A DNA stretch of 64,000 bases from Octopus sinensis (taxonomy: Eukaryota), in NCBI RefSeq assembly GCF_006345805.1, contig NC_042997.1, positions 199,826,001-199,890,000 on the forward strand. Direction: 5' to 3'. The notes under the pieces were generated by a model. The model saw nothing but the letters and a program-made list of their open reading frames with translations. It searched no databases and was not told the origin of the DNA. Position 1 is the stretch's first letter; each line of letters begins with the position of its first letter. This document shows positions 28,713-61,140 of the stretch, piece by piece. The translations under genes and the position numbers were made by a program.

Positions 28713-28751
<39 letters not shown>

Positions 28752-32577: not shown

Positions 32578-32905
32578 TCATCGTCGTCATCATCATCATC
32601 GTTTAATGCCTGCTTGCCATGCTGGCATGGGTTGGATGGTTTGACAGAGGACTATCAAGCCAGGCAGCTGCACCAGGCTCTAATCCGATCTGGCAATGTA
32701 TCTATAGCTGGATGGCCTTCCTAATGCCAACTACTCCGAGAGTGTAGTGGGTGCTTTTTACATGCCACCGACATGGGGGCCAGTCAAGTGATACTGGCAT
32801 CAACCATACTCAAATGGTGCTTTTTACATGCCACCAGGATGGGAGCCAGTCAGGCAGCACTGGCATTGACCACACTTGAATGGTGTTTTTTATGTGCCAC
32901 CGGCA
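32578..32905 (-). mobile_element. Family C element with internal ~65-bp duplication
   Basis: catcatcatcgtttaatgcc...ctggatggccttcctaatgccaac. gccagtca.g..a.tggcat repeated. Confidence 0.75.
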
Positions 32906-35980: not shown

Positions 35981-36704
35981 AGGTTATCAATATAATGAGA
36001 GTAAAATATCAAAGTATCACCTGAGACTACTATTCCAGTATGAAAATATGATGATGTATCTAGTAGACCTAACTTTGAATGTTTTAACTTCTTCCTGTTC
36101 GATCAGTTCATTTTTTTTTATAATTTGAAGACATGATTCTTCAGTGTGATTTTGAGGCTGATAAAAACTGCTTGTGCAGTCATGATTCTTATGTTAAGAC
36201 TGACAATCAGTAGTAGGCTAGATAGCTTTAGTCTATCCTAACTAATAATTTAACAGCATAAATGATGGCGGGTGGTCAACATGGTTTTGACTTTTGCCTG
36301 ATAAAACACAACTATATTCAAAATTATGTAAAAAAAATTTTTTTCCAGGAATTACCTATTTATATTTATCGCTTCCAGTACCAAGACTTACTTCAACAAA
36401 AAATAATCTATTTTCCAATAAACAGTTAGCTGTAATATTTCAATCTAGCCTTACTGTCACCATTGTTCAACTGATACTGTTTTATCAATAATGAAAAGAA
36501 AATAGGGTGGTGAATTGGTAGAATTGTTAATATCTGACAAAATGCTTTGTAGTGTTCGTTCTGGTTTGTGACATTTTAATTTCAAATCCTGCTGAGGTGG
36601 AGTTTTTTATCTTTCCAAGCAGGGCTGGATTAAGACCCATAGAGACCTAAATACTTGAAAGATTTTGGTGCCCCCATAAATATTTAATTCAAAATATAAA
36701 TGCA

Positions 36705-36887
36705 TGCCGGTGGCACGTAAAAGGCACCCACTACACTCACGGAGTGATTGGCGTTAGGAAGGGCATCCAGCTGTAGAAACACTGCCAGATCAGACTGGGC
36801 TGGGTGCAGCCTCCTGGCTTCCCAGACCCCAGTCGAACCGTCCAGCCCATGCTAGCATGGAAAGCGGATGTTAAACTATGATGATGA
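36705..36887 (+). mobile_element. Family C element, well preserved
   Basis: ttggcgttaggaagggcatccagctgtagaaac...catggaaagcggatgttaaactatgatgatgac. Confidence 0.8.
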
Positions 36888-38284: not shown

Positions 38285-38870
38285 TTGTTTCAGTCATTTG
38301 TCTGCAGCCATGCTAGGAACCACTTCCTGCTCCCTCAATGGAGGGAGAGAAGGAGGAGGATGTTGAGGAGGTGGAAACCTCCTTGAAAAATCGAAACAAA
38401 AAATTGTTGCCCACCGAAGAACCTGAGAGCTGCGGGAGAAAAGGAGGACCTGCTGGACACAGCAAAGGAACACCACCCTCCCGCAGCCCAAGGGAAAAAG
38501 AAAAGAAAAAAGAAAAACGGGACATTGTCTTAAAGGATTTTAGTCAAACAAATCGACCCCAGGACCTATTTTTAAGTCTAGTACTTATTCTATTAGTCTC
38601 TTTTGCTGAACCTCTAAGTTATGTGGACATAAATATACCAACACCAGTTGTCAAGCAGTGAGGGGAGGGGGTCAAATACAGAGACATAGTCACACATATA
38701 TATATACACACACACACACATACATATACAACAGGCTTCTTTCAGTTTCCATCTACCAAATCCATTCACAAAGCTTTGGTCAGCCTGAGGCTATAGTAGA
38801 AGACACTTGCTCAAGATACCACAGGGTGGGACTGAACCAAGAAGTATGTGGTTTGGAAGCAAGCTTCTTT
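38285..38870 (-). mobile_element. Family A SINE interrupted by a ~195-bp GC/purine-rich insert (~38327-38521)
   Basis: The SINE tail runs ...gcagccatgctaggaaccac and resumes ...ttttagtcaaacaaatcgaccccagg after the insert. Confidence 0.8.
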
Positions 38871-39856: not shown

Positions 39857-40920
39857 TACAATACAATACACTACACACAGTGTATAACCATCTGTTACTG
39901 CCATTGAAACTGCTAAATTAGTGACATCACAGCTGAATATATATAAGAGGAATTGGAGTATATGGGAAGCAGTGTGATATCACACATACTAATGTTGTGA
40001 TGCATGGAAAACACACCATTGTTTGATAAAAGTGTCAACACTGACAGAACAAATAAAACTAATCCCTCAGGTATTGAAAGGAAAATGTTCCTGTCACTTC
40101 ACAGATGTCTATGTCACTTGACAGGAATCTATTTACCAAAAAAGAAGAAATGACAAGCCTATTCAAATAATTGTGGACTGGACATAAGTGAAACTAGTCA
40201 TACTGCTGTTCAGTTTGTTTATTCTCACATATTTTATATTACATCCTATGAATAATGGCACATTTGCTTACAGGCTTCTAATAAACCAATCATTGGTTCA
40301 TTAGATATAAAACAGCAAGAGTAGCAAACTTGGCAGGTGGGGAGCAAATACCAAAAAAACTCTTAGTTCAAAAGCAACCATCAGTTTCACACCAATAATT
40401 CATATATAAGTGTGAGTGCTTATGTATGTACAAGTTGGAGGAAAATAATATTCACATGAGTTCAATAGATTATATCTTAATTTTTATTTTTTATTTTTAT
40501 GGAAACATAACTCAAAGAAGTCAATGCACAGATATCATCATCATAATGTCTATATCCATTCTTGCATAAGCTGGACAGATTTTATAAAGGCAGATATTCT
40601 ATACCCAGATACTTTTAGAATTAGATAGACAGAGAGATGGCCGTGAACTGGGAACCAAAGGCTAGGAATTTAAGCGAGAGAAAAGGCCGACATATAGCCA
40701 AATAGTGTAGGAATAAAATAGACAGAGTGATGGCCGCAAACTGGGAACCAAAGGCTAGGAATTTAAGCGATAGAATAGGCCGATAGATAGACGAATAGAG
40801 TAGATATTAAATAGACAGAGTGATGGCCACGAACTGGAAATCATGAGCTAGGAATTTAAGCGAAAGAACATGTCGATAGAGAGGCAAACAGCGTATGAAT
40901 TAAATAGATAGAGTGATGGC

Positions 40921-41370
40921 TGAAAGCTGATTGAGAAAGACAAGATTAGAGACGAAAGCCTGTGTGATCGTGTGATAAATTTTCATGAACAAAAGAATAT
41001 GTTGTAAGGAAATGCATGAGCTACAGTTTAATACGAAAAGACATCGCCAGTAAGAAAGAGAAAATAATAAGGGTTTATGTTGATAATACTCGCAAAATAC
41101 AATGAAGGGAGGAGCAAGTTGAAAGCTTAAAAAAACTTATCTGCTATTTTTTCATCCAGACAAACGTATTTCCAGCCAAGGTATGGAAGTCAATAGAAGG
41201 GGTCAAACAGCATGCATTGTTTTATATAGGGTGGAGAGAGTTGTGGAGGGGGGGTAGGAAGTAGGGCATCTTGGCTAGGTGGTGGAATCAAAAGAGAGTG
41301 AGATATAGACAGAGTGACAGTCAATACAGAGACACGTAGTGATAAAGAGAGGGGAGACACGACAACAAAC
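40921..41370. repeat. Satellite spacer, copy 1 (complete)
   Basis: gagaaagacaagattagag...tgtgtgatcgtgtgat...gtatggaagtcaatagaagg...cgacaac is shared with copies 2 and 3. Confidence 0.9.
41220..41229 (-). promoter_or_regulatory. TATA-like motif (CTATATAAAA) in spacer copy 1
   Basis: Motif present, preceded on minus by a C-rich tract. Conserved in copy 2. No functional evidence. Confidence 0.25.
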
Positions 41371-44300
41371 CGCAGCAAACTGGGAACCATGGGCTAGGAA
41401 TTTAAGCGAAAAAATAAGGCTTATAGGGAAATAGTGTAGGAATGAATTAGACAGAGTGATGGCCGTGAACTGGCAATAATAAGCTAGGAATTTAAGCGAT
41501 GGAAAAGGCTGATAGGAAAATATTGTACGAATGAAATAGACAGAGTGATAGACGGGAACTGGCAACAGTTGGCTAGGAATTTAAGCAACAGAAAAGTCTG
41601 ATACATAGGCAAATAGTGTAGGAATGAAAGAGACGGAGTGATGCCCACGAACTGGTTACGATGGGCTAGAAATTTAAGTGTCAGACCAGGCCGATAGTTA
41701 GGTAAATAGTATAGTAATGAAATAGACACAGTGATGGCTGCGAACTCGGAACCATGGGCTAGGAATTTAATGGACAGAAAAGGCCGATAAATATGCAAAT
41801 AGTGTAGGCATTAAATAGACAGGGAACGATGAGCTAGGAATTTCAGGGACAAAAAAGGCCAAGGGTTGGGCACATAGTGTAGGAATAAAACAGACAGTGA
41901 TGGGCGCCAACCGGGAACGATGGGCTAGGAATTTAAGCGACAGAAAAGGCTGATACATAGGCAAAAAGTGTAGGAATGAAATAGAGAGTGATGGCCACGA
42001 ACTGGGAACCATGGGCTAGGAATTTAATGGAAAGAAAATCCTGATACTTAGGCAAATAGTGTAGGAATGAAATACACAGAGTGATAGCTGCGAACTGGGC
42101 ACAATGGGCTAGGAATGTCAGAGACAAAAAAGGCCGATAGTTAGGCAAATAGTGTAGGAATAAAATGGAAAGAGTGATGGCCACGAACTGGTAAACATTA
42201 GCTAAGAATTTAATGGAAAAAAATATCTGATAGTTAGGCAAATAGTGTAGGAATGAAATAGACAGAATTTAAGCAACAGAAAAGGCTGATAGATTGGCAA
42301 ATATTGTAGGAATAACAGAGGCAGAGAGAGGGCCGCGAACAGGGAACAATGGGCTAGGAATTTAAGTGACAGAAAAGGCTGATAGATAGGAAAATAGTGT
42401 AGGAATGAAAGAGAAAGAGTGATGGCCGCAAAACAGGAACCATGGGCTAGGAACTTAAGCGACAGAAAAGGCTGAAAGTTAGGCAAATAGAGTAGGAATG
42501 AAAAAGACAGTCATGGCTGCGAACTGGGAACCATGGACTAGGAATTTAAGCGAAAGAAAAGGCCAATAGTTAGGCAAATAATGTAGGAATGAAATAGAGT
42601 GATGGCCGTGAACACGGAACCATGGGCTGGGAATTTAAGAGACACAAAAGGCTGATAGATATGCTAATAGTGTAGGAATGACATAGACAGAGTGATGGCC
42701 GCAAACTGGAAAACATGGGCTATGAACTTCAGCGACAGAGAAGGTTGATAGATGGCAAATAGTGTAGGAATGAAATAGAGAGAGTGATGGCCGCGAACTG
42801 GGAACCATGGGCTAGGAACCTAAGCGTCAGAACAGGCCGATAGTTAGGCAAATAGTGTAGGAATAAAATAGACAGAGTGATGGCCGAGAACTGGGAACCA
42901 TTGGCTAGGAATTTAAGCGACAGAAAAGGCCGATAGTTAAGCAAATATTGTAGGAATGAAATAAACAAAGTGATGGCCGCTAACTGGGAACGATGGGCTA
43001 GGAATTTCAGGGACAGAAAAGGCTGATAGTTATGCAAATAGTGTAGGAATGAAATACACAGAGTGATGGCCACGAAATGGGAAAAATGGGCTAGGAATTT
43101 AGTGGACAGAAAAGGCCGATAGTTAGGCAAATGGTGTAGGAATGAAAAAGACAAAGTGATGGCCGCAAACTGGGAATGATGGGCTAGGAATTTAAGCAAC
43201 AGAAAAGGCTGACAGATTGGCAAATAGTGTAGGATTGAAATATACAGAGTGATGGCCGTGAACGGAGACCAATGGGCTAGAAATTTAAGTGAGAGAAGAG
43301 GCTGATGGATATGCAAATAGTGAAGGAATGAAATAGACAGACTGATGGCCGCGATACAAAAGGCGGATAGATAGTCAAATAGAGTAGGAATGAAATAGAG
43401 TGATGGCCGCAAATTGAGAACCATGGACTAGGAATTTAAGCAAAAGAAAATGCTGAAAATTACGCAGATAGTGTAAGATTGAAATAGACAGAGTGATGGC
43501 AGCGAACTGGGAACCATGTAATAGAAATTTAAGCCAACAAAAAGTCTGATAGATAAGCAAATACTGTAGGAATGAAATAGACAGAGTGATGGCCGCTAAC
43601 TGGGAACCATTGGCTAGGAATTTAAGCGACAGAAAAGGCCGATAGTTAAGCAAATATTGTAGGAATGAAATAAACAAAGTGATGGCCGCGAACTGGGAAA
43701 CATGTGCTCGGAATTTAAGTGACAGAAAAGGCTGATAAATATGCAAATAGTGTAGGAATGAAATAGACAGAGTGATGGCCGCGAACTGGGAACCATGGGC
43801 TAGGAATTTAAACGATAGAAAAGGCTGATAGATAGGCCAATAATGTAGGAATGAAATAGAAAGAGTGATGGATGTGAACCGGGAACCATTGGCTAGGAAT
43901 CTAAGAGACAGAAAAGGCTGATATATAAGCAAATATTGTCGGAATGAAATAGAGTGACGGCCGCGAACTAGGAACCATGGGCCAGGAATTTAAGCGAAAG
44001 AAAAGGCCCATAGATAGGCAAATAGTGTAGTAATAATACAGACAAATTGATGGCCGAGAACTGGGAACCATGAGCTAGGAATTCAAGGGAAAGAAAAGGC
44101 TGATAGATAGGGAAATATTGTGGGAATTAAAGAGAAAGAGTGATGGCCGCAAACTAGGTGTCATACGCTAGGAACTTCAGCGACAGAAATGGCTAATAGA
44201 TAGGCAATTAATGTAGGAATGAAATAGACAGAGTGATGGCCGCGAAATGGGAACCATGAAATAGGAATTTAAGCAAGAGTAAAGGCTGATAGATATGCAA

Positions 44301-47300
44301 ATAGTGTAGGATTAAATTAGACAAAGTGATGGCCGTGAACAGGGAACCATGGGCTAGGAATTAAATGGAGAGAAAAGGCCGATAGTTAGGCAAATAGTGT
44401 AGGAATAAAATAGACAGAATGATAGCCACAAACTGGGAACCATGGGCTAAGACTTGAAACAACAGAAAAAGCCAATGGAGAGGGAAATAGTGTAGGAATT
44501 AAATACACAATGTGATGGCCGCCAACTAGGAAACATGGGCTAGAAATTTAAGCAACAGAAAAGGCCGATAGATATGCGAATATTGTAGGAAGGAAAAAGA
44601 GAGTGATGGCCGCGAACTGGGAAGCATGGGCTAGAAATTTAAGCAACAGAAAACGCTGATAGATGGGCAGATAGTGTAGGAATGAAATAGACAGAGTGAT
44701 GGCCGCGAAATGGGAACCATGAAAAGGGAATTTAAGCGACAGAAAAAAGTGATAGATATGCAAATAGTGTAGGAATGAAATAGACAGAGTAACGGCCGCA
44801 ATCTGGGTACCATGGGCTAGGAATTTAAACAACAGAAAAGGCCGATATATAGGGAAATAAGGGAGGAATTCAATACACAATGTGATGGCCAACAACTGCG
44901 AACCATGGGCTGGGAATTTAAGAGACACAAAAGGCTGATAGATATGCTAATAGTGTAGGAATTAAATAGAGTGATAACTGAAGTAGGAACCATGGCCTAG
45001 GAATTTAAGCGACAGAAAAGGCTGATAGATATGCTAATAGTGTAGGAATGACATAGACAGAGTGATGGCCGCAAACTGGAAAACATGGGCTATGAACTTC
45101 AGCGACAGAGAAGGCTGATAGATGGCAAATATTGTAGGAATGAAATAGAGAGAGTGATGGCCACGAACTGGGAACAATGGGCTAGTAATTTAAGCGACAG
45201 AACAGGCCGATAGTTAGGCAAATAGTGTAGGAATGAAATGGACAGAAAAGTCCGATAGTTAGGCAAATAGTGTAGGAATGAAATAGACAGAGTAACAGCC
45301 GCAATCTGGGTACCATGGGCTAGGAATTTAAATGACAGAAAAGGCCGATATATAGGGAAATAAGGGAGGAATTCAATACACAATGTGATGGCCAACAACT
45401 GTGAACCATGGGCGAGGAATTTAAGCGATGGTAAAGATTGATAGATAGGCAGATAGTCTAGGAATAAAATAGAGTGATGGGCGCGAACTGGGAACGATGG
45501 GCTAGCAATTTAAGCGACAGAAAAGGCTGATAGATAGGCAAATAGTGTAGGAATGAAATAGAGAGTGATGGCCGCAACCTGGGAACCATGGGCTATGAAT
45601 TCAATAGAGAGAAAATCCTGATACTTAGGTAAATAGTGTGGGAATGAAATAGACAGAGTGATGGCTGCGAACTGGGAACGATGTTATAGGAATTTAAGCC
45701 AAAAAAAAGACTGATAGATATACAAATACTGTAGGAATGAAATAGACAGTGTGATGGCCGCGAACTGGGAACGATGGGCTAGGAACTTAAGCGATTGAAA
45801 AGGCTGATGGATAGGCAAATAGTGTAGGAATGAAATAGACCGAGTGATGGCCGCGAACTGGTAACCATGGGCTAGGAATTTAAGCAACTAAAGAGGCTGA
45901 TGGATAGGCAAATAGTGTAGGAATAATATAGACAGAGTGATGGCCCCGAAATGGGAACCATGGGCAAGGAATTTAAGCAACAAAAGAAGCTGATGGATAG
46001 GCAAACAGTGTAGGAATAATATAGAGAGTGATGGCCGCGAACTGGGATCCATGGGCTAGGAATTTAAGCAACTGAAGAAATTGATGGATAGGCAAATAGT
46101 GTAGGAATGAATTAGGGAGAGAGATGGCCGCGAAATAGGAACCATGGGCTAGGAATTTAAGCAAGAGAAAAGGCGGATAGATGGGCAAATAAATTAGGAA
46201 TGAAATAGACAGAGTGTTGGCCGCGAACTGGGAACCATGCGCTCAGAATTTAAGTGACAGAAAAGGCTGATAGATAGTCAAATAGAGTAGGAATGAAATA
46301 GAAAGAGTGATGGCCACAATCTGAGAACCGTGGACTAGGAATTTAAGAGATAGAAAAGGCTGAAAAATATGCAAATAGTGTAGGAATGAAATAGACAGAG
46401 TGATGGCAGCGAACTGGGAACCATGTAATAGGAACTGAAGCCAAAAAAAAGGCCGATAAATAAGCAAATACCGTAGGAATGAAATAGACAGAATGATGGG
46501 CGCGAACTGGGAACGATGGGCTAAGAATTTAAGCAGTAGAAAAGGCTGAATTATAGGGAACTAGTGAAGGAATGAAATAGACAGAGTGGTGGCTGCAAAC
46601 TGAGTGTCATACGCTAGGAACTTCAGCGACAGAAAAGGCCGATAGATAGGCAAATAGTGTAGGAATGAAATAGCCAGAGTGATGGCTGCCAAATGGGAAC
46701 AATGAAATAGGAATTTAAGCGACAGAAAAGGCTGATAGATAGGCAAATAGAGTAGGATTAAATTAGACAGAGTGATGGCCATGAACAGGGAACCATGGGC
46801 TAGGAATTAAATAGACAGAAAAGGCTGATAGTTAGGCAAATAGTGTAGGAATGAAATAGACAAAGTAATTGCCATGAACTGAGAAACATGGGCTAGGAAC
46901 TTCAGGGACAGCAAAGACCTATAGTTAGACATATACTGTAGCAATGAGATAGACATAATGATAGCCGCAAACTGGGAACCATGGGCTAAGAATTGAAGCG
47001 ACAGAAAAGGCCGATAGATAGGCAAATAGCGTAGGAATTAAATACACAATGTGATGGCTGCCAACTAGGAAACATGGGCTAGAAATTTAAGCGACAGAAA
47101 AGGCCGATAGATATGCAAATATTGTAGGAAGGAAAAAGAGAGTGATGGCCGCGAACTGGGAACCATGGGCTAGGAATTTCAATAGAGAGAAAATCCTGAT
47201 AGTTAGGCAAATAGTGTACGAATGAAATAGACAGAGTGATGGCTGTGAACAGGGAACGATGCGCTAGGAATTTAAGCGACAGACAAGGCTGATAAACACG

Positions 47301-49947
47301 AAATAGTGCAAGAATGAAATACACAGAGTGATGGCCGCGAACTGGGAACCATGTGCTAGGAATTTACGCAAAAAAAAGGCTGAAAGATATGCAAATACTG
47401 TAGGAATGAAATAGACAGAGTGATGGCCGTGAACTGGGAATGATGGGCTAGGAATTTAAGCGATTGAAAAGGCTGATAGATACGCAAACAGTGGAGGAAT
47501 AATATAGACAGAGTGATGGCCGCGAACTGGGAACCATGGGCTAGGAATTTAAGCAACTGAAGAGGCTGATTGATAGGCAAATAGTGTAGGAATGAAATAG
47601 ACAAAGAGATGGCCAAGGACTGGGAAACATGGGCTAGGAATTCAAGGGAAGGAAAAGGCTGATAGATAGGGAAATAGTGTGGGAATTAAAGAGACAGAGT
47701 GATGGCTGCAAACTGGGAAACATGGGTTGGGAATTTTGGGGAAAGAAAAGGCCGTTAGTTAGGCAAATAGTGATGGCTCCGAACTGAGAACGATGGGCTA
47801 GGAACTGGGAATGATGGGCAAGGAATTTCAGGGAGAGAAAAGGCTGATAGATAGGCAAATAGTGTAGGAATGAAACAGAAAGAGTGATGGGCACGAACTG
47901 GGAACGATGGGCTAGCAATTTAAGTGACAGAAAAGGATGATAGTTTTGCAAATAGTGTTGGAATGAAATAGGCAGAGAGATGGCCATGAACAGGGAACCA
48001 TTAGCTGGGAATTTAAGAGAGACAAAAGGCTAAGAGATAGGCAAATAGTGTAGGAATGAAATAGAGTGATGGACGTGAAAAAGGAACCATGGGCTAGAAA
48101 TTTACTCGACAAAAATGCTGAGAGACATTCAAATAGTGTAGGAATGAAATAGACACAGTGTGGCAGCAAACTGGGAAACATAGGCTATGAACTTCAGCGA
48201 CAGAGAAGGCTGAGAGATTGGCAAATGGTATAGGAATGAAATAGACAGTGTGATGGCTGCAAACTGGGGACCGTGGACAAGGAATTTAAGTGAATTTATA
48301 ACACAGAGTGATGGCCACGAACTGGGAAAAATGGGCAAGGAATTTAGTGGAGAGAAAAGGCCGATAGTTAGTAAAATATTGTAGGAATGAAATAAACAGA
48401 GTGATGGCTGCGAACTGGGGTCGATGTGCTATGAATTTAAGTAAAAGAAAAGGCCGATAAATAAGCAAATAGTGTAGGAATGAAATAGAGAGTGTGATGG
48501 CAGCAAACTGGGAAGCATGGCCTAAGATATTGAGCGAAAGAAAAGGCTGATATATATGCAAATAGTGTAGGAATAAGATACACAGATTGATGGCCGAGAA
48601 CTGGGAACCATGGGCTAGGGATTCAAGGGAAGGAAAAGGCTGATAGATAAGGAAATAGTATGGGAATTAAAGAGACAGAGTGATGGCCGCAAACTGGGTG
48701 TCATACGCTAGGAACTTCAGTGACAGAAAAGGCTGATAGATAGGCAAATAGTGTAGGAATAAATTAGTCAGAGTGATGGCCGTGAACAGGGAACCATGGG
48801 CTAGGAATTTAATGGACAGAAAAGGCCGAAAGTTAGGCAAATAGTGTAGGAATGAAATAGACAGAGAGATTGCCACAAACTGGGAACCATGGGCTAGGAA
48901 TTTCAGGGAGAGCAAAGGTCTATAGAAAGGCAAAAGGTGTAAGAATGAAATAGACAAATGATAGCCGCGAACTGGGAGCCATGGGCTAAGAATTGAAGCG
49001 ACGGAAAAGGCCGATAGATATGCAAAAGACAGTGATGGCCGCGAACTGGGAAGCATGGACTAGAAATTTAAGCAACAGAAAACTCTGATAAATAGGCAAA
49101 TGGTGTAGGAATGAAATAGACAGAGTGATGGCCGCCAACTGGGAAGGATGGGCTGGGAATTTCAGTGACAGAAAAGGCCGATAGTTAGGCAAATAGTATA
49201 AGAATGAAATAGACAGAGTGATGACCGCGAATTGGGAAGATGGGCTAGGAATTTATGCGACAGAAAAGGTGATAGATAGGAAAATAATGTAGGAATAAAA
49301 TAGACAGATTGATGGTCGAGAACTGGGAAGCATGGGCTAGGAAATTAAGCAAGAGAAAAGGCTGATAGATTTGCCATAGTGTAGGAATGAAATAGAAAGA
49401 GTGATGGCCGCGAACTGGGAACGATGGGCTAGGAATTTAAGCGAAAGAAAAGGCCGAGATATAGGCAAATAGCGTAGGAATTAAATAGACAGAGTGATGG
49501 TGGTGAACTGGGAACCATGGGCTAGGAATTTAATGGAGAGAAAAGGCCAATAGTTAGGCAAATAGTGTAGGAATGAAACAGACAGTGTGATGGCCGCGAA
49601 CTGGGAAACGTGGTTTAGGAATTTAGTGAAAAGAAAAGGCCGATAGTCAGGCAAATAGTGTAGGAATGAAATAGACAGACTGATGGCTGCGAACTAGAAA
49701 GATTGGGCTAGGAATTTATGCAACAGAAAAGGTGATAGATGGGAAAATAGTGTAGGAATGAAATAGATAGACTGATGGCCTCGAAATGGGAAGCATAGGC
49801 TAGGAAATTAAGCGACATAAAAGGCTGATAGTGTAGGAATGAAAAGGGCAGAGAGATGGCTGTGAGCAGGGAAACATGGGCCGGGAATTTAACAAAAGGC
49901 TGAGAGATAGGCAAATAGTGTAGGAATGAAATGGAGTGATGGACGTA

Positions 49948-50134
49948 AAATTCCTTGCCCATGGCCCCCAATTTGCGGACATCATACTGTCTATTTCATT
50001 CCTATAGCATTTGCCTATCTATCAGCCTTTTCTGTCGCTACCGTTCCTAGACCATAGTCCCCAGTTCGGGGCCATCACTCTGTCTATTTCATTCCTACAC
50101 TATTTGCCTAACTATCGGCCTGTTCTGACGCTTA
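49948..50134 (-). repeat. Two satellite monomers in inverted orientation inside the array
   Basis: aaattccttgcccatgg...ctatttcattcctacactatttgcc...ctgacgcttag is the reverse complement of the monomer. Confidence 0.95.
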
Positions 50135-53100
50135 GATAGATAGGCAAATAGTGTAGGAATTAAATAGACAGAGTGATGGCCGTGAAATGGGAACAATGGG
50201 CTACGAATTTGAGCCATAGAAAAGGCGGATAGATAGGCAAATAGAGTAGAAATGAAATAGAGTGATGGCCGCCAACTAGGATCCATGGGTTAGGAATTTA
50301 AGCAACAGGAAAAGCTGAAAGATATGCAAATAGAGTAGGACTGAAATAGACAGAATGATGGCCGCGAACTGAGAAGAATGGACGAGGAATGTAAGCAACA
50401 GAAAAGACTGATAGATAGACAAATGGTGTAGGAATACAATAGACAGAGTGATGCCCGCCAGCTGGGAACCATGGGCTAGGAATTTCAGGGATAGAAAAGA
50501 ATTTAAATATTCAAATAGTGTAGGAATTAAATAGACAGAGTGATGGCCGCGAACCGGAAAACATGGGCTAGGAATTTAAGCGATAGAAAAGGATCGTAGA
50601 TATGCAAATATTGTCGGAATGAAATAGGGTGATGGCCGCGAACTGGGAACAACGGGCTAGGAATTAAAGCAATAGAAACGGCTGATAGATAGGCAAAAAG
50701 TGTAGGAATGCAATATAGAGCGTAATGGCCGTGAACTGGGAACCATGTTATAGGAATTTAAGCTAAAAAAAAGGCCGATAGATATGCAAATACTGTAGGA
50801 ATGAAATAGACAGTGTGACGGCCGCGAACTGGGAATGATGGACTAGGAAGTTAAGCGACAGAAAAGGCTGATAAATACGCAAATATGTAGGAATGAAATA
50901 GACATATTGATGGCCGCGAACTGGGAACCATGGGATAGTAATTTAAGCAACAGAAAAGGCTGATAGATAAGTAAATAATGTAGGAATGAAATAGACAGAG
51001 TGATGGCCGCGAACTGGAAACCATTAGCTAGAAATTTCAGCGTTAGAGAAGGCTCATAGATAGGCAAATAGTGTGGGAGTGAAGTAGACAGAGTGGGAAT
51101 GATGGACTAGGAAGTTAAGCGACAGAAAAGGCTGATAAATACGCAAATATGTAGGAATGAAATAGACATATTGATGGCCGCGAACTGGGAACCATGTAAT
51201 AGGAATTTAAGCCAAAAAATAGGCCGATAAATAAGCAAATACCGTAGGAGTGAAATAGACAGAGTGATGACCGCGATCTCGGAACCATGGGCTAGGAACG
51301 TAAGAGATAGAAAAGGCTGAGAGATAGACAAATAGTGTAGGAATGGAATAGACGGTGATGCCTGCCAGCTGGGAACCATGGGCTAGGAATTTAAGGGACA
51401 GAAAAGGCTGTTAGATATTCAAATAGTGTAGGAATTAAATAGACAGAGTGATGGCCGCGAACCGGGAAACATGGGCTAGGAATTTAAGCGATAGAAAAGA
51501 ATGGTAGATATGCAAATATTGTCGGAATGAAATAGAGTGATGGCTGCGAACTGGGAACGATGGGCTAGGAATTTAAGCGGAAGAGAAAGCTGATATATAG
51601 GCAAATATTGCAGGAAGGAAATATAGAGAGTGATGGCAGCGAACTGGGAACCATGGGCTCAGATTTTAAGTGACAAAAAACGCTGATAGATATGCATATA
51701 ATGTAGGAATTAAGTAGACCGTGTGATGGCCGCGAACTGGGAACAACGGGCTAGGAATTTAAGCAATAGAAAATGTTGATAGATAGGCAAACAGTGTAGG
51801 AATGAAATATAGAGAGTGATGGCAGCGAATTGGGAACCATGTTATAGGAATTTAAGCCAAAAAAATGGCCGATAGATATTCAAATACTGTAGGAATGAAA
51901 TAGACAGAGTGATGGCCGCGAACTGGGAACAATGGGCTCGGAATTTAAGTGACAGAAAAGGGTGATACATATGCAAATAGAGTAGGAATGAAATACACAG
52001 AGTGATGCCTGTGAACTAAGAACAATAGGCGATGAATTTAAGCGACAGAAAATGCTGATAGATAGGCAAATAGTGTCGGAATGAAATAGACAGAGTGATG
52101 TCCGTCAACTGGGAACCATGGGCTAGGAATTTAAGCCATAGAATAGGATAATAGAGAGACAAATAGGGTAGGAATTAAATAGACAGAGTGATGGCCGTGA
52201 AATCGGAACTATAGGCTAGGAATTTAAGCGATAGAAAAAGCTGATAGATAGGCAAATATTGCAGGAATGAAATAGACACAGTGATGGCCGCGAACTGGGA
52301 TCCATGTTATAGGAATTTAAGCAACAGAAAAGGCTGATAGATAGGTAAATCATGTAGGAATGAAATAGACAGAGTGATGGCCGCAAACTGGGAACCATGG
52401 GCTCAGATTTTAAGTGACAAAAAAGGCTGATAGATATGCAAATAGTGTAGGAATTAAATAGACTGTGTGATGGCCGCGAACTGGGAACAACGGGCTAGGA
52501 ATTTAAGCAATAGAAAAGGCTGATAGATAGGCAAAAAGTGTAGGAATGAAATATAGAGAATGATGACCGCAAACTGGGAACCATGTTATAGCAATTTAAG
52601 ACAAAAAAAAGACCGATAGATATGCAAATATTGTGGGAATGAAATAAACAGTGTGATGGCCGCGAACTGGGAATGATGAGCTAGGAATTTAAGCGACAGA
52701 AAAGGCTGATAAATACGCAAATACATAGTAATGAAATAGACAGATTCATGGCCGCGAACTGGGAACCATGTTATAGGAATTTAAGCCCCAAAACAGGCCG
52801 ATAGGTATGCAAATACTGTAGGAATGAAATAGACAGAGTGATGGCCGAGAACTGGGAGCCATGAGATAGTAATTTAAGCAACAGAAAAGGCTGATAGATA
52901 GGTAAATAATGTAGGAATGAAATAAACAGAGTGATGGCCGCGAACTGGGAAACATGGGCTCAGAATTTAAGTGACAAAATGGCTGATAGATAGGCAAAAA
53001 GTGTAGGAATGAAATATAGAGAGTAATGGCCGCGAACTGGGAACCATGTTATAGGAATTTAAGCCCCAAAAAAGGCCGATAGATATGCAAATAGAGTAGG

Positions 53101-53865
53101 AATGAAATAGACACAGTGATGGCCGAGAACTGGGAGCCATGAGATAGTAATTTAAGCAACAGAAAAGGCTAGTAGATAGGTAAATAATGTAGGAATGATA
53201 TAGACACAGTGATGGCCGCGAACTGGGAACCATGGGCTCAGATTTTATGTGACAAAAAAGGCTGATAGATATGCAAATAGTGTAGGAATTAAGTAGACTG
53301 TGTGATGTCGGTGAACTGGGAACGATGGGCTCGGAATTTAAGTGACAGAAAAGGCTGATAGATATGCAAATAGAATAGGAATGAAATAGACAGAGTGATG
53401 GCCGTGAACTAAGAACAATGGGTGATGAATTTAAGCGACAGAAAAGACTGATAGATAGGCAAATAGTGTAGGAATGAAATTGTCAGAGTGATGGCTGCGA
53501 ACTGGGAACAATGGGCTAGGAATTTAAGCGATAGAAAAGGCCGACAGATAGGCAAATGTTGTAGGAATTAAATAGACAGACTGATGGCCACAAACTGGGA
53601 AGCATGGGCTAGGAATTTAAGCGACAGAAAAGGCCGATAGATATGTAAATAGTGTAGGAATGAAATTGACAGAGTGATGGCCGCAAACTAGGAACCGTGG
53701 CATAGGAATTTAAGGGACAGAAAAGGCTGTTAGATAGGCAAATAATTTAGGAATTAAGTAGACAGAGTGATGGCCTCGAACTGGGACCCATGGGCTTATA
53801 ATTTTAGCGACAGAAACAGCTAATAGATAGGCAAATATTGTAGGGTTGAAATAGACTGTGATGGC

Positions 53866-54345
53866 TGATAGATGAGGGAGAAAGACAAGATTAGAGGCGA
53901 AGGACTGTGTGATCGTGTGATCGATTTTCATGAGTGAAAGAATATGTTGTAAGGAAATGCATGAGCTAAGGTTTAAGACGAAAAATCATCGACAGTAAGA
54001 AGAAGAAAATAATAAGGTTTTATGTTGATAATCCTTGCAAAATACAGTGAAAGGATGGGCAAGTCAAAAGCTTAAAAGTATTTTATCTGCTATTTTTCAT
54101 CCTGACAATCATGTTTACAGCCAGGGTATGGAAGTCAATAGAAGGTGTCAAACAGCATGCATTGGTTTATATAGGGTGGAGGGAATTGTGGAGAGGGGGG
54201 AAGTAGGAAGTAGTGCATCTTGGTTAGGCGGGTGGAATCCAAAGAGAGTGAAATATAGACAGAGTGACACTCAAGATAGAGAGAGAGGGAGAGAGAGTGA
54301 GAGACATAGTGAAAAAGATAGGGAAGACACAACACGACAACGAAC
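53866..54345. repeat. Satellite spacer, copy 2 (complete)
   Basis: Colinear with copy 1, with substitutions and a longer GA-rich tract. Confidence 0.9.
54166..54174 (-). promoter_or_regulatory. TATA-like motif (CTATATAAA) in spacer copy 2, facing into the main array
   Basis: Motif and position match copy 1. No functional evidence. Confidence 0.25.
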
Positions 54346-54802
54346 CGCCACGAACTGGGAACCATGGGCTAGGAATTTAAGTGATACAAAAGGCTGATAG
54401 GCAAATAGTGTAGGAATGAAATAGGCAGAGTGATGGCCGCGAACTGGGAAAAATGGGCTAGGAATTTAAGTGACAGAAAAGCCCAATAGATATGCAAATA
54501 TTGTGGGAATTAAATAGACAGGTTGATTGCCGCGAACTGGGAACAAGGGGCTAGGAATTTAAGTGACAGAAAAGACCAATAGATAGGCAAAAAGTGTGGG
54601 AATTAAATAGACAGGTTGATGGACGCGAACTGGGAACAATGGGCTAAGAATTTAAGTGACAGAAAAGACCAATAGATAGGCAAAAAGTGTGGGAATTAAA
54701 TAGACAGGTCGATGGCCGCGAACTGGGAAAAATGGGCTAGGAATTTAAGTGACAGAAACGGCCAATAGATAGGCAAATAGGGTTGAAATAGACAGTGATG
54801 GC

Positions 54803-55061
54803 CAATAGATGAGGGAGAAAGACAAGATTAGAGATGAACGACTGTGTGATCGTGTGATAAATTTTCATGAGTGAAAGAATATGTTGTAAGGAAATGCATG
54901 AGCTACAGTTTAATACGAAAAGACATCAACAGTAAGAAGAAGAAAATAATAAGGGTTTATGTTGATAATACTCGCAAAATACAATGAAAGGAGGGGCAAG
55001 TCGAAAGCTTAAAAATATCTTATCTGCAATTTTTCATCCTGAGAATCTTGTTTACAGCCAG
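54803..55061. repeat. Satellite spacer, copy 3 (truncated at tttacagccag)
   Basis: Matches the first ~260 bp of copies 1 and 2, then unrelated sequence begins. Confidence 0.9.
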
Positions 55062-55859
55062 GTCCCTCTTACTGCTCCTTGAATGCAGTGGGATCAAACA
55101 TAGAAATGAGAAAGTTGTAAAGGAATCATCATATCTGTGCCCAAACTGTGTCTAGAAAAAGCTGAACATGAATGGTAAGGGAACGAAAGTAAATGTTACA
55201 ATTGATTCATTAGTATGGTAATTACCAAAATACAGAAGAGAACATTACCTGACACTGCATACACACAAACATCTTTCCTGTCAAACAAACTAAGCATATA
55301 ACAACTATATTTACATGATAGTGTAGTAAATGTGAGTGAAACTAACAACTGTGAAATCTATAAAATTAAATAATGACAAAAGATATTTCTAAAATTAGGA
55401 CAAGTTCAAAATTTCAGGTAAAATTAACACTTAGATTGACACCAGTATATCACTAGTACAGATATCAATCTAGGAAGGAAGATAAGTGAAGACAACCATA
55501 ATAGGATTTGAGCTCAGAATGTAAGAGGATGTTTAACTAAATACTTTTTTATGTTGGTACTCTACAGGTTCTATGATTCCACCAGTTTGTTTACATGAAC
55601 AATAATAGTAGTAGCGTTTCTGATTCAGATATAAGGTAAACAAGCTCAAGGGGAGGGTATTAGTTAATTTCATTAATTCCAATTTGTGACTGGTACTTTT
55701 TCCTATTGTCCCTACAAGGATGAAAGTCAAAATTAATCTTGATGGGATATGAACTCCCAATGTAAGAGGTCAGAACATAAACTTCAAGATTTTTTTGTTT
55801 TTGTTTTTTTGTCCCAGTGCTTAAACAATGCTGCCAGTCCATTGCCCAATAATCTCTTT

Positions 55860-56072
55860 TACTCTAGGCACAAGGCCCAAAATTTTTGGGAAGGGGTGGG
55901 TGCAATCAATTAGATGACCCCCCAGTACATAACTGATACTTAATTTATCGACCCAAAAAGGTGAAAGGCAAAGTTGACCTCAGTGGAATTTGAACTCAGA
56001 ACATAAAGGGAGATGAAATACCGCTAAGCGTTTCACCTGGCATGCTCGTGTTTCTGCCAGCTTGCTGCCTTA
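55860..56072 (-). mobile_element. Family B SINE variant
   Basis: ggcacaaggcc...aatttatcgaccc..ggtgaaaggcaaagttgacc...ctgccagcttgctgcc. Confidence 0.75.
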
Positions 56073-58347
56073 GTCCATTGCCCAATAATAGCAACAATAA
56101 AATTGCCTTAAGAAAGTAAAAGCTACATTAGTGAAAATTTTACTTCTCAGATGTTACAAGAATAAAAATGAGTTAAAATATATATAAAAAGTTATTCTGC
56201 CACTAAGTAGTTTAAGTGAGTGATGGATAAGTTAAATGTAGATGAACAACCTTTTGAGAAATAAAATATCAAAAGAGAATGAGAAAGTTAGAAGACAAAT
56301 GTTTCCCAAATTTGTCATAATTCTTCTCTTCATTCCAGAGCCTAGGGACCATTTCAAAAGAATTCTAGTGTAGGTAGCGAAGAAAAACATCACATATTGA
56401 TTCATTCTGCAATAAAACATTAACAGAACAATAGCAGCTTAACTTCTTTGAAATCACAACTAAACAATATGTAAAAAGGATATCTTGGATACTGTTGTAC
56501 ATGGGAAGACAGTGTTGGTCGCAGTTGGAATGCCCCCTGTTACAGACCAGCTTCATCACATTAATCTGGACCCAAAGAACCACAACAAAAGCGTACATGA
56601 AAGATGAAATACATTTTCTGTAAAATCTCTTCCTTAATTCTTCACAGTTTAAAAGTAGAATAAGACTTTTTGCATGTGGCGGCATAATGAAAGTGTCTGA
56701 AGATCTAAGTGCTATAATTGGTTACAGTTCTGATTAATTCACTTAATAAATGTTGATATTTGAACTAAGGTTATATTTAATTTAACAAAGTGAATTCTTA
56801 TGTAGTAATTCTTCATAGTAATGTTGTGATAATTTCCTTCATTAATTTTATTTTACTGTCAACAAAAATATTGGTATTAATCTTTAAGTGCAACGATAAA
56901 GCAATCAAGAAACCAAGTATTATTGAAAACTATCGAATTTTACCAAATACTTCAAGCAAGAAGAAATTTGAATACAGAATTCACCAATCATTTTCAAAGA
57001 GAAGTGTAACAACTAACATGGATTATATAAGCATGTAAATTACAAGAGTAAAATGGAATGGTGACTTGAGAAGTAAGGAGAAGTAAGTCAATTTGTAAGA
57101 GAGAGAGGGAGAACAAAGAAATATAACTGCAAGCAGAAATTGTATGAGATTTTTATGAGAATATTGTAGGCCGAATAGCTTGTTCATAACATAAGAGGGC
57201 TATGAAATTTTAAAGTTTTAACTCATAAGTATTTCATGAAGCCAATGAGCATTTAGTCAAGTGAAATGTGCCAGTAGTAAACTGTCACATGCCATGCTAC
57301 TGCATAACATTCCATTTTTATTGCTGATAAGTAGCTAGTATAAAGTTAGCATAAGTGAAGCAAATTATTCTATAGATATGCTACACGGAAAAATTTCTGA
57401 AATAAGTATAAAGGCTTTATTTCAGTTTTCTGAAAATGGATCCATTAAGCTTCATTGTGGTTGGTGAATATGTTTTGGTGTTTCAATGTGTAAGTATACT
57501 GAGAGAATAATACCAGAACTAGACCAGACAGAACTAAAGAAATGTTTTCAATGAAAGTTTGGGTGGTTAGGATTCATAGTTAGCTCATTGTGTTTGTTCA
57601 TTCACGATTTGTAGCCTCAATCACTTTTACAGGAGAAAACAAAGCATTTGACCACATTTGCAATAATAGCCACCTTGTCTTATTGTTGCTAGGATAATCC
57701 AAAAATTAGAACTTAAACATTTCTCTAATATTTGTACTACACAAAGCAATTAGTGAACAATGACTTCATTGATTAGAGGTCTCCTATGAACCAAATACTG
57801 ATTCACTGAATTTCTGAAAGCAACAGTAACAACGGAGCATATGTAATTTGGTGAGAAAAGATCACAAAGTTTTGTTTGACAAGTACTACATTCTGACTGA
57901 TGTTTACATCTTTCCCAATGAAAACTGAAAGATAGAACCACCCTACACAAACACACAAGCATGTATATATGCATGTATGTATGGAGTCTCTCCACACCAT
58001 TTCTAATTACCAAATTTCATGGAGAACACAATGGTCGGCCTGAGTCTCTGCGTCACCTTAGACAAGTATTTTCTGCCAGTGGGATTGATTGTGGAATTAT
58101 GTGGTTGCAAAACAGATGTCTTAACCACACAATAATGCCTGAACTCTGGACTTCACTGTGATATAATAGCTATCTACAAGATAGATTGGAGATAGCAGAT
58201 TTATTATGGCACCACCAATTTTTATGTATCTTTTTCTTTTTGTAACAACTGTTAGGTTTTAAAACATTAACTTAGGGCTTATCTTAAATTCTCTGATAAC
58301 AACATTTCAAGTCAAGAACTATGGACATATCACATTTCAAGTGAAGA

Positions 58348-58465
58348 ACTTACGGCCATATCACATTGAAAGCACCAGATCTCATCCGATCACTGACATT
58401 AAGCAACGTCGAACCTAGTTAGTACTTAGATGGGTGACCACTTGGAAAACCTAGGTGCTATAAGT
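58348..58465 (+). pseudogene. 5S rRNA pseudogene, full length
   Basis: tacggccatatcac.ttgaaa.cacc...ctc.tccgatcac.ga..ttaagcaacgtcg.acc..gttagtactt.gatgggtgacc.c.tgg.aa.acc.ggtgct is colinear with metazoan 5S. Single copy, scattered substitutions, no oligo-T terminator. Confidence 0.88.
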
Positions 58466-58477
58466 GTCATAATTGGT

Positions 58478-58840
58478 GCAGGAGTGGCTGTGTGATAAGT
58501 AGCTTCCTTACCAACCACATGGTTCCAGGTTCAATCCCACTGCATGGCACCTTGGGCAAGTGTCTTCTACTATAGCCTTGGGCCGACCAAAGCCTTGTGA
58601 GTGGAAGAAGCCCATCGTATATATGTATATGTATATATGTGTTTGTGTGTCTGTGTGTCTGTGTTTGTCTCCCCAACATTGCTTGACAACCAATGCTGGT
58701 GTGTTTATGTCCCCGTAACTTAGAGGTTTGGCAAAAGAGACTGATAGAATAAGTACTAGGCTTACAAAGAATAAGTCCTGGGGTCGATTTGCTCAACTAA
58801 AGGTGGTGCTCCAGCATGGCTGCAGTCAAATGACTGAATG
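58478..58840 (+). mobile_element. Family A SINE, near full length, 12 bp downstream of the 5S pseudogene
   Basis: gcaggagtggctgtgtgataag...ccagcatggctgcagtcaaatgactgaa. Confidence 0.85.
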
Positions 58841-60934
58841 AATGCAAGATGAAATCCATGGATGAGATCCTGAGCAACGGTGATAATGCTGATAGAATCT
58901 TTCTAGCATCTCAGTCTTGTGAATGGAAGAATAAACATAGCAAAGTTAGTAAATAAATGCCAGATTCACATAGGATTTGAACCCAATCAACTCAAGATGG
59001 ACTGTTCTGTCCTATACAAAGCAGCTCACAATGACTAACACATGACAAGCAACAATAAAAAGCCAGAAAGAAAAGTAGATCTATAACTGATTGTCTTATT
59101 GCTGTTGTTGGTTTAATTCCAGGAAGTTACTGATGTTGTACAATAGCAGAAGTTTTTCATTAAAAAGTCTGCAAGAATTCCCTTCCAGTTAAATTATTTT
59201 ATAGTTTTCTTCAGCTCAGATAAATTCCTCACATGCTTTGCTTCTCGGCAGCTATTTTCTCAGTATTTGTCAACTATTGTATATTAGATGCTGGAACATA
59301 TCCATTCTTTCTTTCCTTCCAATCTTATTTTCCAGCTGATTACATCTAAAAGGCAATTGCACACTTGAACAAACCGATGTCAATGACCAAAACATTCCTC
59401 CTAATCATAATGCCTGTAAATCTAATACACAAAAGTACGTTTTTTCTTTTACTATTTTCATGATGTCCCATTTTTCTTTTATTTCACTTCTACTCATCAA
59501 CATAATATTCTTGAACTATTCCAAATGTTGCCATTTTCTATTAAATATTTTTCTTTATTGTTCTTGTCTATTTTTATCTATCATGTATATTTTGTGAATC
59601 CAACTGCATCTTCTGCTTAAAGTTATGGAACACAAATAGTAATTATGTTCAATGATGAAAGACAAAATATGAGAAATGATTATGTTTCTTGGGTCTGTAA
59701 GTCCACTGAACTACTTTGCACTAATTTCTCATGAGCAACAACATTTTCAATCTTTAAACTAGTAGATTTATATAGAGAAAACTTGTTTTAAAATATTTAA
59801 GTAATTCAGTCCTTAGCATTCAGACTATCCTTTTATCTCACTCAGTGCTTCTCAAACATTGTTTTTGCTCTTTTTTTTACTTACATTTTCAATGCTACAC
59901 CCTTACAATTCAGCACAAATATACCACTTGTACATATACATACACATGTACATACAAGCCAGGATGCTTATCAATGCTACAGGTGCAGTGACCATCTCTA
60001 TTGCAAGTTTGGAAATACCCACCAATTTGGATAACGTTCTTTAAATAATACATTTGTTTATTGTTTATAATTTTTATGCATAGGCGATATATGTTAAGTA
60101 AGGTTTCTTTATCTTCTTATTCTCATTTCAAAGTCTATTATTTTCAAACATTTCAGGATGTGCAGGGGAAAATAGCTGAGGGCAAAACAGATTAACCCCC
60201 AGGCTGAGTACAAAGACTTACCCAAACACTATAAGACTGTTTACAGATGCAAATATTGTGAGGAGTAGTACTTCATTGGAAAACCAGACAGTAACTGCTA
60301 GTTTGACTGGCACCACAAGCACCAGTATTGGTGATAAAACAAAAGAAAAAAAGTAGTAAGGACAATGTTGCCCTCTGTTGGCATTTTATTTCAATATGAG
60401 AGACAGAAAACATCTTAATGACACTGAAACAGTATTAGATGGGAAATAATTTTTTTGGCTCTTTTACTCAGGGAACCTGGGGTGAGGGTGCTGAGAACAA
60501 TGGCTATCTGGGGTTCAAAGGGTTAAACACAAATAAATACAGTAACTCACAAAGGGAAAACACAAGTATCATTAAATGGTAGAATATTCAAAATAATGAA
60601 TGGCTAAATCAACCCAAACAGAATTTGAACTCAGGTTTCTGTGCTACTGAATCACTCAGTGTATTTACTCTGGCACTCTATCTTTGCATGTCAGATTACA
60701 TTTAGCATGGTTGAAGATGACTTAATATAATAACATTGATTTATTAGTAAGGCATTCAGTTAGCTTTTGTTGGGGACAAGTAATAGACTCTTGAACTAAC
60801 TCTAAGAGCAAAGAAATGAACCACAAAAATCAATCTCTTTTTAGCATAGAAGAATGAAGCTAAACATCTTAAAGTATTTAGTGTTCTACCATTTATAAAC
60901 TCACTGAACCTTGAATACTAATACTGATTTTACA

Positions 60935-61140
60935 TTCTGGCACAAGGCCAGCAATTTGGGGGAAGTGTGTAAGTCAATCACGTTGACCCTAATACTCAAC
61001 TTGTACTTATTTTATTGACCCCGAAAGGATGAAAGGCAAAGTTGATCTCGGTGGAATTTTAACTCAGAACATGAAGACAAGGTGAAGTTCTGCTAAGCTG
61101 TTTGCCTGGCATGCTCACAATTCTGACAGATCACTGCCTT
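60935..61140 (-). mobile_element. Family B SINE variant, decayed
   Basis: ttttattgaccccgaaaggatgaaaggcaaagttga core. Confidence 0.7.

What the first reader, a model, noticed from the sequence alone, without database searches (positions are those of the whole stretch)
40622..55062. Composite 14.4-kb satellite: 93-bp monomer arrays of very unequal length joined by a recurring spacer
Seen: 3 monomers - spacer - ~134 monomers - spacer - 5 monomers - truncated spacer. Established: tandem-repeat-carrying mobile elements (Helentron/DINE-like types in molluscs and flies) and rDNA-type intergenic spacers have this spacer-plus-subrepeat layout. Inference: the basic unit is [spacer + a few monomers], tandemly duplicated, and one internal block then expanded about 25-fold. 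This could be a satellite caught while emerging from an uncharacterised dispersed element. I do not recognise the monomer.
Basis: partly seen in the sequence, partly recalled or inferred. Interest (0 to 1): 0.72.

Follow-up and report, generated by a model that had tools for sequence, protein, structure and literature searches.

The report
Old 93-bp satellite with copied insert
This is an ordinary, old and decaying 14.5-kb block of a 93-base tandem repeat in an octopus-type genome, interrupted three times by copies of one ~460-base insert; it is real, but it does not look like a satellite caught at birth or a mobile element.

Summary
A 93-bp tandem array runs from about 40586 to 54803 on the + strand (about 143 monomer equivalents). 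It is cut by three copies of a 450-485 bp non-repeat "spacer", and the third copy is truncated exactly at 55062. The layout is 3.6 monomers, spacer, 134 monomers, spacer, 4.9 monomers, half spacer.

The spacer was copied together with its neighbouring monomers: all three junctions fall at the same monomer phase, and the abutting monomers share private indels. The order of events is the reverse of the one proposed. Monomers differ from each other by about 19% everywhere, with almost no positional structure and no higher-order repeat. The spacers differ by only 9-12%, less than any of 369 random array blocks of the same length. So the large block is an old burst that has since decayed, not a recent 25-fold expansion.

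No hallmark of a Helitron/Helentron, DINE, LTR or rDNA spacer was found, and there is no coding signal. No second copy exists elsewhere in the window or in one Octopus vulgaris locus. No described family matched, but Dfam, Repbase and whole octopus genomes could not be searched.

Verdict: an undescribed member of a known kind, of low interest.

The parts
40586..40920 (+). Block A: 3.6 monomers of the 93-bp repeat. The leftmost is degenerate. Identity to the consensus is 0.77-0.90, the most diverged part of the array, at its edge.
   Evidence: HMM hits at 40586, 40677, 40770 and 40863; sequence read.
40921..41369 (+). Spacer copy 1 (sp1), about 450 bp of non-repeat sequence. It enters after monomer position 59 and leaves at about position 59.
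   Evidence: Alignment of the three copies; BLAST 86% to sp2 and 90% to sp3; not monomer-like by HMM against shuffles.
40904..40916 (+). Left copy of a 13-nt direct repeat, ATAGAyAGAGTGA (monomer positions 43-55). It brackets the first ~400 bp of sp1. It resembles a target-site duplication.
   Evidence: the repeat finder family D1; an exact 13-mer match between spacer and monomer consensus is reached in 0.2-0.4% of shuffles.
41305..41317 (+). Right copy of the 13-nt direct repeat inside sp1. The same motif is in sp2 at 54255-54267. It is followed by a purine-rich low-complexity stretch that is longer in sp2.
41370..49946 (+). Block B, left part: about 92 monomers.
49947..50134 (-). Two monomers in inverted orientation inside the big block. 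Both junctions lie within monomers.
   Evidence: Minus-strand HMM hits with E-values of 1e-21 and 3e-24; minus-strand BLAST HSPs at 81-85%; sequence read.
50135..53865 (+). Block B, right part: about 40 monomers. Tandem Repeats Finder suggests a weak 279-bp period, but lag-3 identity is only 0.83 against 0.815 at lag 1, so there is no real higher-order repeat.
53866..54344 (+). Spacer copy 2 (sp2), about 480 bp. It is longer than sp1 because of a GA-rich tract at 54271-54300.
54345..54803 (+). Block C: 4.9 monomers. They are more alike than the rest of the array (neighbour identity 0.89, best pair 0.957), which points to a later local duplication.
54804..55062 (+). Spacer copy 3 (sp3): only the first 259 bp. 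Homology ends at ...TTTACAGCCAGG. The missing half is not found downstream in the window.

Best explanation
This is a non-coding 93-bp satellite array in an octopod genome. It was built in essentially one burst of tandem amplification (replication slippage or unequal sister-chromatid exchange) and has since drifted without homogenisation.

After the burst, an unrelated sequence of about 400-460 bp became lodged in one monomer at position 59/60, possibly with a 13-nt target duplication. That insert, with roughly one monomer on each side, was then copied twice within the array by unequal exchange or gene conversion between monomers. The sp1 lineage split from sp2/sp3 first, and sp2 and sp3 then arose as a ~937-bp tandem duplication.

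Later events were a two-monomer inversion, small deletions, a local re-duplication in block C, and a break that removed everything beyond the middle of sp3.

Shown: the anatomy, the co-duplication of spacer and neighbouring monomers, the near-star divergence pattern, and the lower divergence of the spacers. Inferred: the order of events (this assumes similar substitution rates in spacer and monomers), the copying mechanism, and the lack of function.
For: Array and spacers.

Near-star, old array:
- Mean pairwise identity is 0.812 (sd 0.044-0.046), against an sd of 0.040 after permuting columns. Only 9 of about 8,900 pairs reach 95% or more.
- Identity is flat at lags 1-12 and across all 10-monomer bins.
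- Every register shift aligns at about 76%, counting gap columns.
- CpG sites have decayed to TG/CA.

Spacers younger than the array: p-distance is 0.086-0.120, against 0.186 +/- 0.018 (minimum 0.130) for length-matched array blocks. K2P distances point the same way.

Co-duplication: private indels occur in the abutting monomers only. Positional identity is raised only for the abutting monomer (0.904 upstream for sp2/sp3; 0.882 downstream for sp1/sp2) and falls to background beyond it.

The insert is foreign to the monomer: no HMM similarity beyond shuffles, apart from the 13-mer at the matching monomer position.

Not coding: no codon periodicity (p = 0.52), and minus-strand ORF lengths fall within shuffles.

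Not a collapse or duplication artefact: all copies differ from each other by 9-19%.
Against: - The clock argument assumes equal neutral rates. Gene conversion among spacers, or a lower rate in the spacer, would also make the spacers look younger.
- The spacer shares the strong purine bias of the monomers (0.63-0.67 against 0.68, with flanks about 0.50). That is a little odd for a random foreign insert and fits a common origin.
- A GA-rich microsatellite-like tract sits just before the point where the array resumes, as in the left flank of Helentron-type elements.
- How sp1 and sp2 came to lie 12.9 kb apart is not shown.
- No genome-wide data could be consulted.
Confidence: 0.6

Rival explanations
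1. The basic unit is a dispersed, tandem-repeat-carrying mobile element (Helentron/HINE-, DINE- or pearl-like), in which the 'spacer' is a right flank joined to a left flank. Three elements lie head to tail, for example after rolling-circle read-through, and one central array expanded.
For: - The junction phase is constant.
- Spacer and monomers share the purine bias.
- A GA-rich tract lies directly upstream of the array, as in the HINE left flank.
- sp3 ends cleanly at 55062, which could be a true element end.
- The same window holds another dispersed family whose ~180-bp head is followed by short 42-bp or 66-bp tandem arrays, so elements of this kind exist in this genome.
Against: - No subterminal inverted repeats or complementary inverted repeat.
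- No palindrome or hairpin at the candidate right-flank end or left-flank start; z-scores are 0.0 to +1.9.
- The left end of the composite has no left flank.
- No second copy of monomer or spacer in the other 49.5 kb of the window or in 20 kb of O. vulgaris.
- No protein-database trace of the repeat's long ORFs.
- The big-block monomers are older than the spacer copies.
Confidence: 0.15
2. The ancestor was a tandem repeat of about 550 bp (spacer plus one monomer). Its 93-bp segment amplified early in all units. The spacers only look younger because gene conversion kept them alike.
For: - It explains the identical junction phase without any insertion event.
- It explains the shared purine bias.
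- The 13-mer of monomer sequence inside the spacer could be a relic of common ancestry.
Against: - The spacer has no detectable similarity to the monomer otherwise.
- It needs conversion to act on spacers 12.9 kb apart while monomers 93 bp apart escaped it.
- The blocks are extremely unequal in size.
Confidence: 0.12
3. The array has a function: centromeric or heterochromatin satellite, a source of piRNA or long non-coding RNA, or a regulatory repeat.
For: Strong strand asymmetry over 14.5 kb. Nothing else.
Against: - No homogenisation and no conserved box: every column varies, and conservation is 70-99% without a sharply conserved motif.
- Small size.
- Unique flanks full of SINEs.
- Only a sub-threshold chance match in Rfam.
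Confidence: 0.05
4. Assembly artefact: spacer copies or array length were created by mis-assembly.
For: Long tandem arrays are error-prone in assemblies. No reads were available to check.
Against: Monomers differ by about 19% and spacers by 9-12%, each with private substitutions and indels. The copies are therefore distinguishable and unlikely to be collapsed or falsely duplicated.
Confidence: 0.03

Closest known systems
Short or medium satellite-DNA arrays scattered in euchromatin (for example the low-copy satDNAs of Tribolium castaneum and the scattered satDNAs of Crassostrea gigas; PMC10218199, PMC8268682, review PMC10048060)
   Same: Head-to-tail monomers of about 100 bp, an array of about 10 kb embedded in unique, transposon-rich DNA, non-coding, more diverged at the edge, and interrupted by non-satellite sequence.
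   Different: Copy number and distribution in the genome are unknown here. The monomers are unusually diverged (19% pairwise) with no homogenisation at all, so this is a relic rather than an actively evolving satellite.
Helentron non-autonomous elements with central tandem repeats (Cg_HINE of the Pacific oyster, PMC7492417; DINE-1/DINE-TR1 of Drosophila; pearl elements of bivalves)
   Same: Non-repeat sequence joined to a tandem array at a fixed point and in a fixed orientation. A microsatellite-like tract lies just before the array.
   Different: Those elements have flanks of 50-100 bp with subterminal inverted repeats, a complementary inverted repeat and a 3' palindrome, and many dispersed copies. 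None of these was found here.
Transposon or other insertions inside satellite arrays that are then carried along by unequal crossing-over (as in primate alpha satellite and Drosophila centromeric arrays; from general knowledge)
   Same: One insert sits at the same monomer phase in several places, and the flanking monomers share private variants.
   Different: The insert here has no recognisable transposon features apart from a possible 13-nt target duplication. There is no A-rich tail, LTR ends or terminal inverted repeats.

Membership tests
Satellite / tandem-repeat DNA | Head-to-tail copies of one monomer forming a long array | tested here: met
   147 + strand and 2 inverted monomer hits between 40586 and 54803; period 93.
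Satellite / tandem-repeat DNA | Non-coding | tested here: met
   No 3-base periodicity of variation (p = 0.52). ORF lengths are within composition-matched shuffles. No protein homologues.
Satellite / tandem-repeat DNA | Present as many copies or loci in the genome (abundance) | not testable with these tools
   No octopus genome or read set can be searched by DNA. There is nothing in the rest of the window, in one 20-kb O. vulgaris locus or in the metagenome contigs.
Higher-order-repeat (homogenised) satellite | Identity peaks at a multiple of the monomer; neighbouring units are near-identical | tested here: not met
   Lag profiles are flat at 0.80-0.83. All register shifts align at about 76%.
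Helentron/HINE, DINE-1 or pearl-type element carrying tandem repeats | Left and right flanks with 11-12 bp subterminal inverted repeats and a complementary inverted repeat (PMC7492417) | tested here: not met
   No inverted repeats in sp1. Only one 10-nt, 90% pair within the first half of sp2.
Helentron/HINE, DINE-1 or pearl-type element carrying tandem repeats | Palindrome or stem-loop at the 3' end | tested here: not met
   DNA folds of the 100 nt before the sp3 end, and of the matching parts of sp1 and sp2, give z-scores of +0.5 to +1.9.
Helentron/HINE, DINE-1 or pearl-type element carrying tandem repeats | Microsatellite in the left flank next to the array | tested here: inconclusive
   A GA-rich tract at 54271-54300 in sp2 is much shorter in sp1. 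It could equally be secondary growth of low-complexity sequence.
Helentron/HINE, DINE-1 or pearl-type element carrying tandem repeats | Many dispersed copies with the same flank-array junctions | not testable with these tools
   Only negative sampling: the window and L001.
rDNA intergenic spacer with subrepeats | Lies between rRNA genes of a tandem rDNA unit | tested here: not met
   Rfam finds only one isolated 5S-like sequence 3.3 kb downstream (58348-58466). There is no 18S/5.8S/28S and no 5S array.
LINE-mediated retroposed insert (for the spacer only) | Target-site duplication of 7-20 bp | tested here: inconclusive
   A 13-nt direct repeat at the expected monomer position. However, 55-85 bp of extra sequence follow the right copy.
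LINE-mediated retroposed insert (for the spacer only) | A-rich or simple-repeat 3' tail next to one duplication | tested here: not met
   The sequence before the right repeat is ...GGAATCAAAAGAGAGTGAGAT, with no tail on either strand.
Solo LTR (for the spacer only) | TG...CA ends with a 4-6 bp target duplication | tested here: not met
   sp1 and sp2 can be read as TG...CA, but the bases on either side do not repeat.

The most novel reading that the evidence does not exclude
The composite is one locus of an uncharacterised family of tandem-repeat-carrying mobile elements in octopods that lacks the usual Helentron hallmarks. The 134-monomer block would then be an early example of a satellite seeded by that element.
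Probability: 0.1. Interest if true: 0.45.

Novelty: new member of a known kind. Interest (0 to 1): 0.15.

Why it matters
It matters little beyond annotation. The searchable literature held no description of cephalopod satellite DNA, so a curated 93-bp monomer and its spacer would be a useful entry for a repeat library. The locus is also a clean textbook case for dating events inside an array from internal divergence. It does not open a new question about satellite birth, because the array is old and static.

Tried and rejected
- Protein search with the longest repeat ORF (231 aa, minus strand) as a proxy for finding the repeat in other assemblies: no hit.
- Exact-pattern scans of metagenome contigs with a 20-mer of the monomer and a 23-mer of the spacer: 0 hits each.
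- Searching papers for monomer or SINE strings and for cephalopod satellite studies: nothing.
- Coding repeat protein: rejected.
- Spacer as degenerate monomers: rejected.
- Spacer as an RNA-derived element (searched over sp2 and sp3): only a sub-threshold NEAT1_2 match at 18 bits against a threshold of 60.
- Hairpins or inverted repeats in the spacer: none.
- Higher-order repeat: rejected.
- Identifying the organism through the mariner-like ORF: uninformative, because relatives occur in crustaceans and molluscs. The SINE ORF worked instead.
- The ENA contig L002, fetched through a mariner hit, carries none of the window's repeats and is probably not from an octopus.
- The 93-mer as an ancient dimer of about 46 bp: only suggestive. 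The two halves match at 29 of 45 positions, z about 3.2, but ungapped self-similarity at shift 45 is within shuffles.
Full report
**1. What is there**

Tandem Repeats Finder reports a 93-bp period across 40618-54780. A profile HMM built from 111 full monomers finds 149 monomer hits, all between 40586 and 54803 and none elsewhere in the window. 147 are on the + strand and two, at 49947-50134, are inverted.

Three stretches do not match the monomer: 40921-41369 (sp1), 53866-54344 (sp2) and 54804-55062 (sp3). They align with each other end to end at 86-91% identity by BLAST. A 23-mer from them occurs exactly three times in the window, against 0 expected. sp3 stops in the middle of the spacer at 55062, and the missing half is not found downstream.

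The layout is therefore 3.6 monomers, sp1, 134.4 monomer equivalents (92, then 2 inverted, then 40), sp2, 4.9 monomers, half spacer. Only the left edge moves, by about 36 bp, because the first monomer is degenerate.

The whole block, spacers included, is purine-rich on the + strand (0.63-0.68 against about 0.50 in the flanks).

**2. Source organism**

The window is AT-rich and full of microsatellites and SINE-like repeats. An ORF that lies in one SINE copy (58470-58796, minus strand) has a single database relative, a hypothetical protein of Octopus vulgaris.

The O. vulgaris chromosome segment around that gene (L001, GCA_951406725.2) carries the window's SINE at 82-86% identity and a second window repeat at 82%. 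An octopod source is therefore supported. The species is not determined.

**3. Age and structure of the array**

- Mean pairwise identity among monomers is 0.812.
- It is the same at lags 1 to 12 in every part of the array and in every pair of 10-monomer bins.
- Every register shift of the array on itself aligns at about 76%, counting gap columns.
- The spread of pairwise identities (sd 0.044) is barely above that of column-permuted data (0.040). Only 9 of about 8,900 pairs reach 95%, against 0.35 expected.

This is the signature of a near-star genealogy: one burst from a nearly uniform monomer, followed by independent decay. Distance to the consensus is 0.116 (K2P), or 0.110 without CpG sites. 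The CpG positions show the usual decay to TG and CA. There is no higher-order repeat. Block A at the left edge is the most diverged. Block C is the only place with clearly younger copies, with a best pair at 0.957.

**4. The spacers were copied together with their neighbours**

All three array-to-spacer junctions fall after monomer position 59/60, and both spacer-to-array junctions resume at about position 59.

Two sets of private markers show common descent of spacer plus flank:
- The first monomer after sp1 and the first after sp2 share a 4-bp deletion (GGCTkATAGGsAAATAG) found nowhere else in the array.
- The monomers abutting sp2 and sp3 share GGGTTGAAATAG and a 2-bp deletion, also found nowhere else.

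Positional identity is raised only for these abutting monomers (0.904 and 0.882) and falls to background one monomer further out. This rules out three independent insertions. It fits copying tracts of about one monomer on each side, by gene conversion or unequal exchange. For sp2 and sp3 it fits a simple ~937-bp tandem duplication.

**5. Order of events**

I used one aligner for both kinds of sequence. The spacers differ by p = 0.120 (sp1-sp2, 441 bp), 0.092 (sp1-sp3) and 0.086 (sp2-sp3). 369 random pairs of in-phase 442-bp blocks from the big array differ by 0.186 +/- 0.018, with a minimum of 0.130.

The opposite is observed.

Under equal rates, the burst came first, at about 0.11 substitutions per site per lineage. 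The sp1 versus sp2/sp3 split followed at about 0.06, then the sp2-sp3 duplication at about 0.045, and then the local duplication in block C at about 0.02. The caveat is that conversion among spacers, or a slower rate in the spacer, would mimic this pattern.

**6. What the spacer is**

- It is not made of degenerate monomers.
- It has no Rfam match of note (searched over sp2 and sp3).
- It has no inverted repeats.
- It has no stable hairpin at the places where a Helitron-type end would be expected.
- No other copy exists in the window.

One feature stands out. A 13-mer identical to monomer positions 43-55 (ATAGACAGAGTGA) lies about 400 bp into the spacer. The first ~400 bp are therefore bracketed by a direct repeat of the target monomer (reached in 0.2-0.4% of shuffles). 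This looks like a target-site duplication of the length made by LINE-type retroposition, but there is no tail. In addition, 55-85 bp of purine-rich low-complexity sequence follow before the monomer resumes. I treat the insert's origin as unknown.

**7. Comparison with known kinds**

The Helentron-type elements of oysters are defined by short flanks with subterminal inverted repeats, a complementary inverted repeat, a microsatellite in the left flank and a 3' palindrome, and by many dispersed copies (PMC7492417). Only the microsatellite-like tract has a possible counterpart here. The inverted repeats and the palindrome were tested and not found. Dispersal could not be tested.

An rDNA spacer is excluded: the only rRNA-like sequence is one isolated, decayed 5S-like copy 3.3 kb away. 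A coding repeat is excluded.

The best fit is an ordinary euchromatic satellite array carrying an insert that was passed along by unequal exchange.

**8. Novelty and limits**

No paper in the library prints the monomer, and I found no cephalopod satellite survey. The repeat's ORFs have no relatives among 5.8 billion proteins, and metagenome contigs hold neither monomer nor spacer.

None of these replaces a search of Dfam, Repbase or the octopus assemblies, which the tools do not allow. I therefore call it an undescribed member of a known kind, with low interest (0.15). About 10% remains for the more novel reading, that it belongs to an unrecognised family of tandem-repeat-carrying elements.

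Noticed in passing
window 58348-58466 (+), with 58302-58367: A full-length 5S rRNA match (89 bits, Rfam) that reads as decayed at its CpG sites. It is preceded by a 30-bp tandem duplication of its own 5' end and followed within 5 bp by a SINE copy (58472-58838). The other SINE copies lack the 5S part, so this is probably a 5S pseudogene next to a SINE rather than a 5S-headed SINE.
   Followed up: partly
window 681-1041, 28552-28938, 38539-38869 (-), 14355-14595 (-), 58472-58838; L001 1381-1761, 10053-10423: An abundant SINE of about 370 bp ending in a TG/TA-rich microsatellite. It is shared with Octopus vulgaris at 82-86% identity. Its translation is annotated as a hypothetical protein in O. 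vulgaris.
   Followed up: partly
window 7801-7988, 15312-15607, 29725-30201, 32587-32909, 34000-34382, 36703-36887 (-): A dispersed family with a common head of about 180 bp. Four of the six copies are followed by a short tandem array: a 42-bp unit at 30.0 and 34.3 kb, and a 66-bp unit at 15.5 and 32.8 kb. This is a genuine element with internal repeats, unrelated to the 93-mer. One head copy is also in O. vulgaris L001 (2492-2676).
   Followed up: partly
window 25563-26078 (-): A remnant of a mariner-type transposase (Pfam Transposase_1). It is 82-89% identical to unnamed Logan/ENA proteins and 76-84% identical over parts to SETMAR-like or GVQW3-like proteins of crabs and mantis shrimp. This may be a horizontally spread mariner lineage.
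   Followed up: partly
window 55920-56074, 3574-3729, 4864-4998, 19314-19450, 30489-30616, 60928-61141: Another short dispersed repeat of about 130-220 bp, at 75-84% identity. One copy lies about 860 bp downstream of the array.
   Followed up: no
window 49947-50134: An inversion of exactly two monomers inside the big block. It is as diverged from the other monomers as they are from each other (81-85%), so it is old.
   Followed up: yes
window 9490-9615: A cluster of purine-rich simple repeats (AG, GAGGAGAGAGA, GTGGTGGAGATGGAG). It gives a local GC skew of +0.32, the only other strongly skewed segment in the window.
   Followed up: no
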